The translations under genes were made by a program, and so were the position numbers. DNA of 64,000 nt from the NCBI RefSeq assembly GCF_032062105.1, contig NW_026936117.1:620001-684000 (forward strand). Direction: 5' to 3'. A model generated the notes under the pieces. The model was not told where the DNA came from. It saw only the letters and a program-made list of their open reading frames with translations, and ran no database searches. Positions 10,947 to 63,786 of this stretch are shown here, piece after piece (within the stretch, counting starts at the first letter, position 1; every line of letters starts with the position of its first letter). Origin of the DNA: Saccostrea cucullata (taxonomy: Eukaryota).

Positions 10947-13900
10947 ATGTTGTTGAATTATTTGATCACAATTTGTTTTTGTCTTACATTTCATGGGACT
11001 TTCGCAGCTACTGAATTGTTCCACAATGCTGATTTTGAGAGCACTTCCTTTTCCGGTAATTGGGTGGCCATTGACTGTACCTTGAATTCCCGTACTGATG
11101 ATAAGTATCATGGAACTCGCAGTGTCATGGTCTCTCATAGGCGAGTAAAATGTCATCCATCCCTTTTTCCTGTTTATCTGGTTGCAGCATTGCTATTTAC
11201 ATTGCCATTGAATTTATGAATCACAAAGTAAAGACATAGCCAAATATGTTTTATACTAGTATTTGTTTCTTGACCAGATTCGACATTAGCTAATTGCTTG
11301 AGCTACTGGTTTCTATAAAAATCTTTCTGATGTTGCAGACATCATACGTGGTCGGCAGTCCGGCAGACATTTCATGTCACTCCTGGGAAGAATTATGTGG
11401 TTAAGATGTACTTCAAGCTCCTTAACCTTCCTGCTGGACATGCTTACGCCGAAGTCAAACTGAACGTGGCTCTTACTGTTAACGGTATTCAGCAACCAGA
11501 TCTTACAAAATGAAAAGTCACTATGCCTTAATATAAGTGTAATGAAAACAATATTTTACTTGGTAAAGGACGGTAAATCATACCTCTCTTTGGTACACTT
11601 GCTATTGGTAATTTGCGTAAATTTTCTATCATGAAAACTCATATTAGCTAACATATCCTTAAGGTAACCCTAAGTACTTCGGGCTAGCAAAAATTCCCAT
11701 GCAGCAGTTAAAATTTGGATGGACGGAAATAAGTGGCGATTTCCATGCCCAGAATGGTTTGTTTATCTTGAAATAACATACATTCTCATTGATTTTACTA
11801 TTCAATAGGCCTTTTTACGAATGTCTAACTACTGTAGTATTTCACATTTTATTCAGGAGCCACAGATGCTGGTATATACATAGAGATACCAGACATATCT
11901 GTCAATTACCTGGTAGACTTCGCCAGTGCTCAGGAGCTACCCCATAATTCCCACTGGATGACAGATGCCCAAAACAGAATCAATAGTATCCGGAAGGCCC
12001 CTGTCTCATTTAAGTAAGTCAAACATGTGCTTTGCTATATCATGCCAGGTCATCAACGATGCATCATGATCCACTGTAAATAAGAGGTCTGATTAGTACT
12101 TTTGTCTGATAAGTGCGTCGGGATGGAAAGTTTTCTCCCATTTATTATTGGAGAGAAAAATGATAAAAGTATAAAAATATCTACCTTTAAAGAATTATAT
12201 CAAAGTATCCATTTTAGTAGTATGATTTTTCTAAGAAACAGTAACTGGTGTAACTGTTCATTATTTTTTTATTGTCGTCATTGAGGAAATGACTGTTGAC
12301 AGTATCGTAGGAAGATGAAAACTTTTCCTCAGTGATGACAATCGTCATTTCCCTTTGAACGATAATGATACGCTTTTGAATTTTTTTTTATTACACCATG
12401 CTCACTGTTCTCTTTTTGTAAAATACACGTTTCTTTTTCAAATCAGAAATTTAGTGCCCTATATGTAAGCTTTGAACTAGCAAACAACAAAACCGATGAT
12501 AATTTGTGTGTTCAAGTAGATTCATAGGTCGCCTGCAGATAGCTCTTCATTTTGAGATATTGTAACTTACTAAATGAACTTGATATAAGAGGCGCAAAAT
12601 TACAATAGATTGTTTATTGACTATGGACGATAAATGATAAATAACAACTAAATTGAATGACAAAGAAGTTGACATCACCTTTTTCATCTTAATTTTCCTT
12701 ATTTAATGTAGTAATATTCCACTATTACCTGATCTTGATGATTATGTCTCAAATTTTTTGCTACTCAAGAGCTTGCTATGAGTAGGATTATTTTATAAAG
12801 AGAGGCAGCCTACTCACAGACAAATTGATGTTACAGGGATTTCTGCAGCATCATTTAAATTAACATTTCGTACATTATATGGTTGTAATAATGACCTTCT
12901 TAGCAAATTTAACGCACATTACGTTGTATTTTGGATGACTTTTTATACCAATTGTTAGGCGTTTGTTTTTATACTGCATCGACCACGGAAAGTTCCGTCT
13001 ACATGATCAAAATACAGGGCTCACGGCAGATGTGAATTATCAACAGGGTGTACTCAGTCCTAATGGGCACCTGATCCCACCTTCGGAACATCAAGGGGTC
13101 CGTGCTTTATGCCCCTCTACCATTAATTGTTTTGTTTATAATTTTTTTTGAGATCGACCACTATTATTAATCATTACCTTTTACATTATTCATACGCAAG
13201 ATAAAAAAGCACCTTCGAATACTTGTCACCTAATGTTATTGCAGTCGATTTGATTCGCATATGGATCTTGAAAAGGTAATACATGTATAGAGGGAAATAT
13301 TTTATGCACAATAATTTATAGGTTTTTCATTTTATTACTTAACTGAAGAAACTTGATATAGATTTATCAATGATTATAAATATCACTGAAAAAAATGAAA
13401 TATATATGAGGATAACGAACAATTATCGATCAAAAACTATATACAATACTTTTATGTGAAAAGGGTATAAACATAAACCTAAATTCCAGAGGTGGTATCA
13501 TTCAAGTTTCTAGGTGAAGTTATCATCCCCATTAATGACCGTTCACACCCGATGTGGACCCTATGTTTTGATAAATGGTGTAAAACATAACAGCTTTTAT
13601 CCGCCCTTTGCTTTGTGCATTTTTCATGTGTTTTTGATGATATAAAAGTAGATAACCAAAGCTCAATCAATTAAAATATGTACATACGTTTCTTTAGATT
13701 GCCACATGGAGTGAATGCACATGGGATCTCCACTGAGGTAAATTTAGAAGTGAAGAACTTGTTTTGCTGACCTTGTCAGCAAATACAATTTATCATTGAG
13801 TCAAATGCTGACTGACATTTTCATACTAATTGTTAGTCCATTATTTAAACATCGAATTGACGACGGATTTTCAGTTATTTCCTGATCATGACAAGGAGCA

Positions 13901-62500: not shown

Positions 62501-63786
62501 AATATAATTATATATGATTTAAAACTTTTCAATAAATTGCCAATCAAACTTTTTTCAGCACCATACAGTGTGAATTTCGTAAAGATTTGCGTTCAAAATA
62601 TGCAAAATGTGGATGCATCGGAATTCTTGTCATAAAAAATATCTTGAACCTTAAATTTCAAAAATCCTCGAATTTATTGCTTAAGTCTTATGTATTTCCG
62701 ACACAAAGAAACAATTTTTGATAATTTACATTCAGAAACATGCATAGAAACTTGATTTAAATAGACCTACCCTCAATTTTTTTTTACTTACAGCCATTTT
62801 TTATCTCTAAATCACGTGACTTAGATGTTTGATGTTGAAAAACAAACATCAAAATCATGAACTGGAATGATTATAGTTATATAAAATCACATTTTAAAGT
62901 GATTTTATCGTAGGCCGGAAAATGGCCTTATAGAGAATGAACCTTTGTAGTTTTGTAGCATTAGTTTTGTAGCATTCTGGTTATAAGGATGTTTACAGCC
63001 GCACCAGAATTTCCAAAATAATACGAAAGTTCCTGAAAATATTAACTGTTAATGCTGTAATGTATTGTTAAACTTACTTAATAGAGGATAGAGGATACTT
63101 TAAACAGTTGGGCATTTTCTTGATAGTTAACCGATAATCAGTCACAAATTACCATCCAAAGTTGATTCATGATGAAATAATCACTGCTATAGAAGATCCC
63201 GTAAACAGTGACACATTGGTACTCACTGCTACAGAAGATCCCGTAAACAGTGACACATTGGATACTCACTGCTATAGAAGACCCCGTAAATAGTGACACA
63301 ATAGATACTCACTGCTATGGAAGATCCCGTAAACAGTGACACATTGGATACTCACTGCTATGGAAGACCCCGAAAACAGTGACACATTGGATACTCACTG
63401 CTATAGAAGACCCCGTAAACAGTGACACATTGGATACTCACTGCTATGGAAGACCCCGTAAACAGTGACACATTGGATACTCACTGCTATGGAAGATCCC
63501 GTAAACAGTGACACATTGGATACTCACTGCTATGGAAGATCCCGTAAACAGTGACACATTGGATACTCACTGCTATAGAAGATCCTGTAAACAGTGACAC
63601 ATTGGGATCATATATTGCTCCGTCCCAGAACCCCCACAACAGAACGCCCTCTACCGCAGGGTGACTAAAATACAGAGTAAGAAGCTCCTCCAAAGCCGCT
63701 GCCTTTTTGGTACTGTCGGATTCTAGAATCGTTAGCTCTGTTATCCAGATCTTCAGTCCAGCTTCTGCTACCTTATCCAGTCTGTA
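59524..63786 (-). CDS. GH10 xylanase-like enzyme, paralog F, last 3 exons (5' part lies right of the window)
   Basis: Exons 63786-63571 (YRLDKVAEAGLKIWITELT...WGFWDGAIY), 59856-59649 and 59558-59524 (DDHHVTQIAFG*). Very similar to E. Confidence 0.88.
59901..60060. repeat. Near-perfect 160-bp palindrome
   Basis: Arms aataaggtatcattttttgagtttt...ccataaagccc and gggctttatgg...aaaactcaaaaaatgataccttatt around a gaa loop. Confidence 0.9.
60564..62949. mobile_element. TA-flanked TIR element (~2.4 kb) with nested repeats, in a gene F intron
   Basis: ~38-bp TIR tacaaaggatcattctctataaggccgttttgcggcctac / gtaggccggaaaatggccttatagagaatgaacctttgta. Confidence 0.85.
63181..63605. repeat. 43-bp tandem repeat x10 spanning an exon/intron junction of gene F
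   Basis: tcactgc recurs at 63181, 63223, 63266, 63309, 63352, 63395, 63438, 63481, 63524 and 63567. Confidence 0.95.

What the first reader, a model, noticed from the sequence alone, without database searches (positions are those of the whole stretch)
10947..63786. Endogenous array of at least six GH10 genes with a different substrate cleft in each paralog
Seen: five complete paralogs share 13-exon structure, signal peptide and both catalytic Glu (WDV.NE, ITE); partial F keeps the nucleophile. The -2 subsite motif differs: ENALKW (A, ~15320), EGALKW (B, ~23204), ANMLKW (C, ~29505), VNALKW (D, ~37045), ANALKW (E, ~55360). Known: this E-N-x-x-K corresponds to Glu43/Asn44/Lys47 of Cellulomonas fimi Cex, is nearly invariant in GH10 and binds the -2 sugar. 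Endogenous molluscan GH10s have been reported, so the family itself is not new. Inference: a secreted digestive enzyme battery diversified for different algal or detrital glycans (decorated or mixed-linkage xylans, glucans).
Basis: partly seen in the sequence, partly recalled or inferred. Interest (0 to 1): 0.8.

Follow-up and report, generated by a model that had tools for sequence, protein, structure and literature searches.

The report
Oyster GH10 xylanase gene array
A hooded-oyster chromosome segment carries six tandem genes for secreted xylanase-type enzymes; two of the gene types have, in every oyster checked, replaced a sugar-binding glutamate that most such enzymes keep. The gene family is already known, but this split into enzyme types has not been described.

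Summary
The window (Saccostrea cucullata) holds five complete 13-exon genes, A-D on plus and E on minus, plus the 3' end of F. Each encodes signal peptide, CBM4_9 and GH10, with both catalytic Glu intact. The motifs read ENALKW, EGALKW, ANMLKW, VNALKW and ANALKW at the stated places. F, completed outside the window, reads ENALKW.

The gene order AB, C, D, then an inverted gene is the same in Crassostrea virginica. C next to D is also seen in Ostrea edulis and Saccostrea echinata. Val (D type) and Ala (C type) at the Cex-Glu43 position are kept in every ortholog found, so these are old, constrained enzyme types.

B's Asn-to-Gly and E's Glu-to-Ala are recent changes in the faster-evolving copy of each young pair. 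E's reference allele also has an AT splice donor and no RNA reads on its exons.

The Glu is not nearly invariant here. It is absent from about 40% of animal GH10s, with at least 10 independent changes.

Bacterial precedents (CjXyn10C Gly295, XynA E96A) suggest weak binding at the -2 subsite, meaning polymer-preferring enzymes with longer products rather than new substrates. The family expansion in molluscs is published.

Verdict: a new member of a known kind, of moderate interest.

The parts
10947..17578 (+). Gene A: 13 exons, 574 aa, signal peptide + CBM4_9 + GH10, motif ENALKW (canonical)
   Evidence: Model. Exons: 10947-11140, 11339-11484, 11664-11756, 11857-12013, 13698-13737, 15200-15358, 15456-15511, 15607-15744, 16134-16305, 16565-16672, 16856-17071, 17197-17404, 17541-17578. 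Closest orthologs are C. gigas P0165 and C. virginica P0164 at 74-75% identity.
19278..26148 (+). Gene B: 13 exons, 574 aa, young duplicate of A, motif EGALKW (Asn to Gly, two base changes)
   Evidence: The 3' half is identical to RefSeq XP_062583009.1 (P0001). A versus B: dN/dS 0.22, dS 0.28. B carries 23 unique amino-acid changes against 8 in A.
28065..32146 (+). Gene C: 13 exons, 571 aa, motif ANMLKW
   Evidence: Orthologs keep Ala: O. edulis P0166, C. virginica P0153, S. echinata P0284 (ANMLKW, 92% identity).
34677..40019 (+). Gene D: 13 exons, 572 aa, motif VNALKW
   Evidence: VNALKW is present in C. virginica P0152, C. gigas P0161, O. edulis P0162 and S. echinata P0284.
51697..59268 (-). 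Gene E: 13 exons, 572 aa, motif ANALKW; fast-evolving duplicate of F
   Evidence: Residues 197-572 are identical to RefSeq XP_062583059.1 (P0004). E has 42 unique changes against 13 in F. No RNA reads fell on exons 1-8 in two oligo-dT runs.
59524..64000 (-). Gene F, 3' part: exon 11 63571-63786, exon 12 59649-59856, exon 13 59524-59558. Exons 3-10 lie beyond the window end.
   Evidence: All located introns are GT-AG. Exon 6 reads ENALKW. Exons 1-2 were not found before the contig ends.
15320..15337 (+). A: codons GAA AAT GCC TTG AAG TGG (E-N-A-L-K-W), the -2 subsite motif on strand beta-2
   Evidence: Aligns to FENEAKW of PDB 7D88.
23204..23221 (+). B: GAA GGT ... (E-G-A-L-K-W)
29505..29522 (+). 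C: GCA AAT ATG ... (A-N-M-L-K-W)
37045..37062 (+). D: GTT AAC ... (V-N-A-L-K-W)
55353..55370 (-). E: GCA AAT ... (A-N-A-L-K-W), one base away from F's GAA
55705..55706 (-). E intron 4 donor reads AT instead of GT
   Evidence: The near-identical copy on contig C17802 reads GT at this place, and so does F.
11141..11142 (+). A intron 1 GC donor (AG|GCGAGT). B has the same at 19472-19473.
   Evidence: The same GC donor is present in the C. virginica ortholog, whose 573-aa gene call spans this intron.
15512..15513 (+). A intron 7 GC donor (GG|GCAAGT). B has the same at 24172-24173.
   Evidence: C. virginica has GT here.
18302..18415 (+). Relic of a C-type exon 2 between A and B, followed by a copy (18464-18808) of the SPRY-coding DNA found upstream of A (7233-7570)
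   Evidence: 82% amino-acid identity to C exon 2 against 56-59% to A/B exon 2. SPRY domain. This marks the junction of the roughly 8.3-kb tandem duplication that made A and B.

Best explanation
This is an oyster-lineage tandem array of endogenous secreted glycanases. Each gene encodes a signal peptide, an N-terminal CBM4_9 module, a GH10 (beta/alpha)8 catalytic domain of the XynA-like subgroup, and a short C-terminal beta extension. All copies keep the acid/base Glu (WDVxNE), the nucleophile Glu (WITE) and the other near-invariant GH10 residues, so they should be retaining beta-1,4-glycanases.

The order AB, C, D, then an inverted EF-type gene existed before Saccostrea and Crassostrea split. 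By then the C type had fixed Ala and the D type Val at the position of Cex Glu43 (XynA Glu96). The AB and EF types kept Glu. These states have since been held by purifying selection.

The most likely effect is inferred from bacterial precedents, not shown here. The C and D enzymes probably bind the -2 sugar weakly. They would prefer long polymer chains, handle short oligosaccharides poorly and release longer products. The canonical copies (A, F) would finish the oligosaccharides. That is a division of labour by chain length or decoration tolerance, not necessarily by glycan type.

Within Saccostrea two younger duplications made A/B and E/F. B (Asn to Gly) and E (Glu to Ala) are the faster-evolving copies, either drifting under relaxed constraint or beginning to specialise. 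The reference allele of E is probably impaired, because it has a GT-to-AT splice donor and no RNA support.
For: Gene structure and intact ORFs.
GH10 membership: P0004 scores 158 bits and P0001 123 bits against PF00331.
Fold: the model of P0004 has pLDDT 94 and TM-score 0.82/0.85 to 7D88 XynA.
CBM4_9: found in orthologs P0152 and P0165 and in precomputed hits.
Motif position: equals Cex 43/44/47 by the alignment offset and XynA E96/N97.
Ortholog conservation: VN in 5 D-type sequences, AN in 8 C-type sequences, with starred clades in the tree.
Conserved gene order: C. virginica, O. edulis and S. echinata.
Conserved sites: all paralogs keep 52-54 of the 54 columns that are at least 90% conserved across 109 animal GH10s.
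Selection: dN/dS is 0.22 for A/B and 0.20 for E/F.
Asymmetric rates: 23 versus 8 changes (p=0.011) and 42 versus 13 (p=1e-4).
Precedents: XynA E96A loses beechwood-xylan activity (bioRxiv 10.1101/2020.10.20.348094). CjXyn10C has Gly295 in place of the Glu, with weak -2 binding and poor oligosaccharide activity (PMC7848910). A Streptomyces GH10 N86A mutant falls to 8% activity and shifts products to X3/X4 (PMC5877695).
Tissue: molluscan GH10s are expressed mainly in hepatopancreas (PMC7560691).
Against: No enzyme data exist for any of these proteins.

Expression of A-D in S. cucullata was not tested. E showed no exon reads in two RNA runs of unknown tissue.

No protein matching A, C or D turned up in database searches spanning 165-2026 aa. 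B and E appear only as truncated RefSeq products.

The Glu has been lost at least 10 times in a 56-sequence tree and is absent from about 40% of animal GH10s. That pattern also fits weak constraint at this site.

Clade-diagnostic substitutions are not concentrated on the catalytic face (23 of 55 against 118 of 295; p=0.76).

In XynA, E96A was strongly deleterious, so the C and D types must either carry compensating changes or have low xylanase activity.
Confidence: 0.62

Rival explanations
1. Near-neutral variation. In this animal GH10 branch the -2 Glu matters little for hydrolysis of polymers, so its replacement is tolerated. On this view the paralogs are largely redundant dosage copies of one xylanase activity.
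For: Glu is absent from 49 of 118 animal representatives, with at least 10 independent changes. Even within the EF type the residue differs: Glu in F and O. edulis, Ala in E, Gly in the C. virginica inverted gene. There is no excess of diagnostic changes on the catalytic face. Published work assigns molluscan GH10s a single activity (PMC7560691).
Against: Within the C and D clades the residue is fixed (all Ala, all Val) across three genera, while neighbouring positions vary. E96A abolished beechwood-xylan activity in the nearest solved homolog. In other GH10s, loss of this Glu or the Asn clearly changes oligosaccharide activity.
Confidence: 0.23
2. Switch of glycan type. On this view each motif variant adapts the cleft to a chemically different substrate, such as mixed-linkage or beta-1,3 xylan, glucans, or heavily decorated xylans.
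For: The nearest solved relative, XynA, and the Ampullaria crossean GH10 act on both xylan and cellulosic substrates (PMC6408826). XynA E96A affected beechwood xylan more than arabinoxylan or beta-glucan. The natural substrate of oyster xylanases is stated to be unknown (PMC13128122).
Against: Only the Glu position, plus the Asn in B, differs among the known subsite residues. The -1 and +1 residues are invariant. The known natural precedents change chain-length preference, not sugar type. No assay exists.
Confidence: 0.12
3. B and E are on the way to becoming pseudogenes, so the array holds effectively four working genes: A, C, D and F.
For: Both evolve faster than their partners. E has an AT donor at intron 4 where the near-identical copy and F have GT. 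E's exons had zero read depth. RefSeq products are truncated, at 300 and 376 aa. The second copy of the E locus on contig C17802 stops matching inside intron 4, and no E exons 5-13 follow in the next 38 kb.
Against: Both ORFs are fully open over 572-574 codons. Neither violates any of the 54 highly conserved columns. Approximate branch dN/dS is about 0.3, not 1. A cryptic in-frame GT donor lies 9 nt upstream in E. The tissue of the RNA runs is unknown.
Confidence: 0.4

Closest known systems
Orthologous GH10 arrays of other oysters (Crassostrea virginica chromosome CM130316.1 at about 31.25-31.29 Mb; Ostrea edulis OX387704.1; Saccostrea echinata LOC133175304)
   Same: Same two-domain proteins of about 572 aa. 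Same gene order (AB, C, D, inverted gene). Same motif states: ENALKW, AN(K/M)LKW and VNALKW. Same GC donor in intron 1 of the AB type.
   Different: S. cucullata has extra young duplicates (A/B and E/F), and two rhodopsin-type GPCR genes lie between D and E. The inverted gene reads GNALKW in C. virginica. These arrays are annotated automatically ('anti-sigma-I factor RsgI6-like', 'uncharacterized') and I found no description of them in print.
Bacillus sp. KW1 XynA, bifunctional GH10 xylanase/cellulase (PDB 7D88/7D89)
   Same: It is the best sequence and fold match (E=1e-59, 33% identity, TM-score 0.82-0.85). The match covers the C-terminal extension as well as the barrel. It has the same E-N-x-x-K-W motif (E96, N97) and the same catalytic Glu pair.
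   Different: It is bacterial, has no CBM4_9 and has the canonical Glu. In it the E96A change was deleterious, whereas oyster C-type enzymes carry Ala naturally.
Cellvibrio japonicus Xyn10C (PDB 1US2/1US3) and Bacteroidetes Xyn10C-like Pm25
   Same: These are natural GH10s that lack the -2 Glu (Gly295 in CjXyn10C). They are described as binding weakly at -2 and acting poorly on xylo-oligosaccharides (PMC7848910). This is the mechanistic precedent for the C and D types.
   Different: They are distant in sequence (about 21% identity in the fold hit), have a different modular layout and are bacterial. The effect in the oyster enzymes is untested.
Cellulomonas fimi Cex (PDB 2EXO/1EXP)
   Same: Same GH10 fold (TM-score 0.69/0.82). 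The motif maps to Glu43/Asn44/Lys47 by the alignment offset.
   Different: About 23% identity. The CBM is of a different kind and in a different position. It lacks the XynA-type extensions.
Published molluscan GH10 expansion (Wang et al. 2020, PMC7560691) and oyster xylanase transcripts (PMC13128122)
   Same: GH10 is expanded in bivalves and gastropods, often carries CBMs, is expressed in hepatopancreas, and 11 xylanase genes are expressed in the Pacific oyster.
   Different: Those papers treat GH10 as one activity and call the family mostly dispersed. The passages I read (searched for 'GH10' and 'xylanase') mention neither the conserved array nor the -2 subsite states.

Membership tests
Glycoside hydrolase family 10 (Pfam PF00331) | Significant match to the family profile above the curated cut-off | tested here: met
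   P0004 (gene E exons 5-13) scores 158.4 bits and P0001 (gene B exons 8-13) 123.4 bits; the cut-off is 22.1. Window exons also match PF00331 in the six-frame genome search.
Glycoside hydrolase family 10 (Pfam PF00331) | (beta/alpha)8 barrel fold like solved GH10 enzymes | tested here: met
   AlphaFold model of P0004 has pLDDT 94. All of the top 50 listed Foldseek hits except two derived designs (6FHE, 5RG5) are GH10 xylanases. TM-scores: 7D88 0.82/0.85, 2EXO 0.69/0.82.
Glycoside hydrolase family 10 (Pfam PF00331) | Acid/base Glu in the N-E motif at the end of strand beta-4, and nucleophile Glu in the T-E motif at strand beta-7 | tested here: met
   WDVNNE (A-D) and WDVYNE (E, F); WITELT or WITEMT in all six.
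Glycoside hydrolase family 10 (Pfam PF00331) | Canonical -2 subsite motif E-N-x-x-K-W | tested here: not met
   K and W are present in all copies. Glu is present only in A, B and F. Asn is lost in B. This is a typical feature of the family, not one required for membership: CjXyn10C also lacks the Glu.
Glycoside hydrolase family 10 (Pfam PF00331) | Endo-beta-1,4-xylanase or glycanase activity | not testable with these tools
CBM4_9 carbohydrate-binding module (Pfam PF02018) | Profile match in the N-terminal ~135 residues after the signal peptide | tested here: inconclusive
   Met in orthologs P0165 (58.2 bits) and P0152 (47.3 bits; cut-off 25.9) and in precomputed hits for P0170, the near-identical copy of F. 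The window's own exons 1-4 are too short singly; the best is exon 2 against CBM_4_9_1 at E=0.022. The joined model was not submitted to the tool.
XynA-like GH10 subgroup (PDB 7D88) | Barrel flanked by extra N- and C-terminal segments that pack on it, with much closer sequence similarity than to classical GH10s | tested here: met
   P0004 residues 10-358 align to 7D88 residues 75-416 at E=1.4e-59. The next GH10 structures score 3e-29 or weaker. The extension is described in the XynA preprint.
Endogenous animal gene (not contamination or a recent bacterial insert) | Spliceosomal introns at conserved positions, animal neighbours, orthologs in the same order in related animals | tested here: met
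   There are 12 introns per gene at the same positions and phases in all copies. A TRIM/SPRY gene and GPCR genes flank the array. The contig is 696 kb. Gene order is conserved in three other oysters.

The most novel reading that the evidence does not exclude
Repeated, lineage-stable replacement of the -2 subsite Glu (by Ala, Val or Gly) may define distinct specificity classes within animal GH10s. On this reading, filter-feeding bivalves carry a conserved multi-enzyme xylan/glucan digestion cassette whose members are tuned to different natural substrates, for example red- or green-algal xylans, decorated detrital xylan, or beta-glucans. That would give a handle on the open question of what oyster 'xylanases' actually digest.
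Probability: 0.25. Interest if true: 0.55.

Novelty: new member of a known kind. Interest (0 to 1): 0.36.

Why it matters
Oysters express many endogenous 'xylanase' genes, yet a 2026 paper states that their natural substrate and role are still speculative.

This work shows that the genes form a conserved cassette. It has at least four ancient types. Two of those types lack a sugar-binding Glu whose loss changes activity in bacterial GH10s.

That gives concrete, cheap experiments:
- express A, C and D;
- swap the one residue in each direction;
- compare activity on polymers and oligosaccharides.

It also corrects automatic names ('anti-sigma-I factor RsgI6-like') and points to likely mis-annotation of this locus in the reference genome. 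Beyond that, it is an ordinary example of tandem duplication and divergence in a digestive enzyme family.

Tried and rejected
1. RNA evidence. Two oligo-dT RNA-seq runs and two contig sets were laid on E exons 1-8. Reads fell only on intronic repeats (53.6-55.2 kb and 58.2-58.8 kb). Depth on the exons was zero, except for one 125-nt contig in exon 4 with 5 mismatches, probably from the other copy. This is no support, but also no proof of silence, because the tissue is unknown.

2. Enrichment test. I asked whether clade-diagnostic substitutions concentrate on the catalytic face, defined as the beta-alpha loops of the model. They do not (odds ratio 1.1, p=0.76). Wholesale cleft remodelling is not supported.

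3. Local annotation look-up.

4. Reference-genome proteins for A, C and D. Searches covered 165-2026 aa and found none. I do not know whether they are un-annotated, flagged as pseudogenes or fused.

5. Pfam on single N-terminal exons. The exons are too short to give significant CBM hits.

6. Bacterial contamination or recent horizontal transfer. Rejected because of the introns, the conserved order in other oysters and the animal neighbour genes.

7. Residue-to-ligand distances. Model coordinates are not exposed, so these could not be measured. The mapping to the cleft rests on sequence alignment to Cex and XynA.

8. Spliced protein models. The joined models of A-F were analysed only inside scripts and were never sent to the search or fold tools. 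Database proteins identical to parts of B and E, and orthologs, were used there instead.
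Full report
**Where the window is**

The window is G000:C18254:620001-684000 of a 1.17-Gb assembly. Two database proteins identical to parts of its genes are RefSeq products of Saccostrea cucullata on a 696,443-bp contig. XP_062583009.1 ('anti-sigma-I factor RsgI6-like', 300 aa, P0001) matches gene B. XP_062583059.1 ('uncharacterized', 376 aa, P0004) matches gene E. 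The window has no N runs and 33.6% GC.

**The observation**

All five hexapeptides are at the stated coordinates. WDV.NE occurs once per gene.

A six-frame self-comparison of gene A against the window gave twelve conserved blocks, each repeated four or five times. I enumerated GT/GC-AG pairs that keep the frame between blocks and chose the pair shared by the paralogs. I then located the small exons 5, 7 and 13 and the start codons.

The result is five complete 13-exon models:
- A, 10947-17578 (+)
- B, 19278-26148 (+)
- C, 28065-32146 (+)
- D, 34677-40019 (+)
- E, 59268-51697 (-)

Exons 2-12 have identical lengths in all five. The ORFs are 571-574 aa without stops. The models reproduce P0001 and P0004 exactly where they overlap.

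Each N-terminus has a hydrophobic core followed by a small residue just before the conserved ELLxNxDFE. This is consistent with a signal peptide but is an inference.

F contributes exons 11-13 inside the window. Exons 3-10 lie in the next 6 kb of the contig, all with GT-AG introns and an open frame, and exon 6 reads ENALKW. Exons 1-2 were not found before the contig ends. In a near-identical copy on contig C17802 they lie 7-13 kb upstream of exon 3.

Genome-wide, GH10 exons occur on this contig and on C13399, which carries a seventh gene of a second C-like type (P0171). They also occur on C17802 and C2547, which look like alternative copies of the E-F region.

**Splice-site oddities**

A and B share GC donors at introns 1 and 7.
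- The intron-1 GC donor (AG|GCGAGT) is also present in the C. virginica ortholog, whose gene call gives a full 573-aa product.
- A and B have diverged under purifying selection, so these donors are almost certainly functional.

E has AT in place of GT at the intron-4 donor (window 55706-55705).
- F has GT there, and so does the 96%-identical copy of E's first four exons on C17802.
- That second copy stops matching E inside intron 4. No E exons 5-13 follow in the next 38 kb.
- So the E locus differs structurally between the two assembled copies.

**What the proteins are**

- P0004 and P0001 match Pfam GH10 far above the cut-off. Orthologs P0152 and P0165 also match CBM4_9 at residues 22-156 (precomputed hits).
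- The AlphaFold model of P0004 (60-sequence alignment A1) has mean pLDDT 94 and is an eight-stranded barrel with a C-terminal beta extension.
- The best structural and sequence match is XynA of Bacillus sp. KW1 (7D88): TM-score 0.82/0.85 and E=1.4e-59 over residues 10-358. Classical GH10s, including Cex, follow at TM-score 0.67-0.71.
- XynA is a bifunctional xylanase/cellulase with extra N- and C-terminal segments (PMC6408826; bioRxiv 10.1101/2020.10.20.348094).

**The motif position**

HMMER aligns P0004 residues 39-279 to Cex (1EXP) residues 28-277.

Exon 6 of A aligns ENALKW to ENEAKW of 7D88 chain positions 116-121. Allowing for the 20-residue tag implied by the 428-residue chain against the 408-residue native protein, these are E96 and N97 of XynA.

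**Relatives**

The family (CBM4_9 + GH10, about 565-580 aa) is widespread in molluscs, annelids, brachiopods and amphioxus.

In a 56-sequence maximum-likelihood tree, all oyster sequences form one starred clade. It contains four starred subclades:
- AB type: A, B, C. gigas P0165, C. virginica P0164.
- C type: two subgroups, seven sequences.
- D type: D, P0152, P0161, P0162.
- EF type: E, F, P0170, O. edulis P0167.

Motif states by clade are as follows:
- D type: VNALKW in all, including S. echinata.
- C type: AN(K/M)LKW in all; S. echinata has the same ANMLKW as the window.
- AB type: ENALKW, except B.
- EF type: EN(A/I)LKW, except E. The inverted gene next to D in C. virginica reads GNALKW.

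Gene order:
- In C. virginica the genes lie in the order 573-aa AB type, 577-aa C type, a 162-aa fragment, the 572-aa D type, then a 535-aa gene on the opposite strand.
- In O. edulis a 572-aa gene precedes the D type on the same strand.
- In S. echinata, C and D are fused in one 1139-aa model.

The array and its C and D motif states therefore predate the split of these genera.

**How invariant is the Glu?**

Among 118 animal representatives the Glu43 position is E in 69, A in 19, G in 9, V in 6 and other residues in the rest. The Asn position is N in 104. The Lys position is K in 115. On the 56-row tree the E/non-E state changes at least 10 times.

**Are the odd copies decaying?**

- All six paralogs keep 52-54 of the 54 columns that are at least 90% conserved in 109 animal GH10s. 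B and E keep all of them.
- Pairwise dN/dS is 0.22 for A/B (dS 0.28) and 0.20 for E/F (dS 0.44). Older pairs are saturated.
- Polarised with outgroups, B has 23 unique amino-acid changes against 8 in A (p=0.011). E has 42 against 13 in F (p=1e-4).
- Splitting dN in those proportions and halving dS gives roughly 0.3 for the B and E branches and about 0.1 for A and F. This is my arithmetic.
- So the two recent motif changes sit in the accelerated copy of each young pair. The pattern fits relaxed constraint or early specialisation, not outright neutrality.
- For E, the AT donor, the structural difference in the second copy, and zero read depth on exons 1-8 in two oligo-dT runs (about 1.7-1.9 Gb read each, tissue unknown) lean towards impairment of the reference allele.

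**Mechanism**

The closest experimental evidence is as follows:
- XynA E96A and N97E lost activity on beechwood xylan and more than half of their activity on arabinoxylan and barley beta-glucan.
- C. japonicus Xyn10C naturally has Gly295 in place of this Glu, binds weakly at -2 and is poor on xylo-oligosaccharides. Bacteroidetes Xyn10C-like enzymes also lack it (PMC7848910).
- A Streptomyces GH10 with the -2 Asn changed to Ala kept 8% activity, stopped cleaving X3 and released X3/X4 instead of X2 (PMC5877695).

The best-supported prediction is that C- and D-type enzymes have a weak -2 subsite, prefer polymers and give longer products, while A- and F-type enzymes finish the oligosaccharides. 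A change of glycan type is possible but has no direct support.

Apart from this position, the known -1, +1 and catalytic residues are invariant. Clade-diagnostic substitutions are not enriched on the catalytic face.

**What is already known**

Expansion of GH10 in herbivorous molluscs, frequent CBMs and hepatopancreas expression are published (PMC7560691). That paper treats GH10 as a single activity and calls the family mostly dispersed. A 2026 study found 11 endogenous xylanase genes constitutively expressed in the Pacific oyster and calls their role speculative (PMC13128122). My searches found no description of the conserved array or of the subsite states. Those searches cover open-access text only.

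**Verdict**

The family and its expansion are known. What is new is modest: a conserved four-type cassette in oysters, with two types stably lacking the -2 Glu. The headline 'a different cleft in each paralog' overstates what is partly recent, possibly degenerative change. The joined spliced models were used only in scripts and were not sent to search or fold tools.

Noticed in passing
window 18302-18808, compared with 7233-7570 and 28324-28437: Between A and B lies a relic of a C-type exon 2 (82% amino-acid identity to C exon 2). It is followed directly by a copy of the SPRY-coding end of the TRIM-like gene that lies upstream of A. This is the junction of a roughly 8.3-kb tandem duplication that ran from the end of the TRIM gene to intron 2 of C and produced A and B.
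   Followed up: partly
window 4521-5951 and 6891-7571 (+): A TRIM-like gene lies upstream of the array. It has B-box zinc fingers and a coiled coil in a 476-aa ORF, and a SPRY domain in a 226-aa ORF.
   Followed up: partly
window 40571-41404 (-) and 47081-47944 (+): Two intronless rhodopsin-family GPCR ORFs (7tm_1, E=4e-24 and 5e-22) sit between D and E. In C. virginica the inverted GH10 gene follows D within about 550 bp, with no such genes between.
   Followed up: partly
G000:C17802 (L008, L009, L011-L014), compared with window 51600-59400: A 65-kb contig carries a near-identical F-type gene (the source of RefSeq P0170) followed by only exons 1-4 of an E-type gene, 96.4% identical over 3.8 kb. 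It has GT at the intron-4 donor, diverges inside intron 4, and shows no further E exons in the next 38 kb. It is either a structurally different haplotype or a mis-join.
   Followed up: partly
window 53600-55200 and 58200-58800 (E introns 7 and 1): RNA-seq reads and very deep contig words map here on both strands at 95-99% identity, with many loose ends. These are multi-copy transcribed repeats inside E's introns, not E transcripts.
   Followed up: no
window 13884-14014, 14678-14793, 31569-31678, 22101-22246 (-), 231-302, 20244-20338: A short element is repeated in several introns and flanks of the array, up to 79% identical at the translated level. It is probably a transposable-element end.
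   Followed up: no
S. cucullata reference annotation of this contig: Only truncated products were found for B (300 aa, starting in an extension of exon 8) and E (376 aa, starting at a Met in exon 5). No protein matching A, C or D was found in database searches spanning 165-2026 aa, although all have open 13-exon reading frames. The locus is probably under-annotated.
   Followed up: partly
L016 7012-9111 (C. virginica): A 162-aa GH10 fragment gene lies between the C- and D-type genes of C. virginica. It repeats the nucleophile exon of the C-type gene exactly (same WITELTINSSDEH), so it is a partial local duplication.
   Followed up: no
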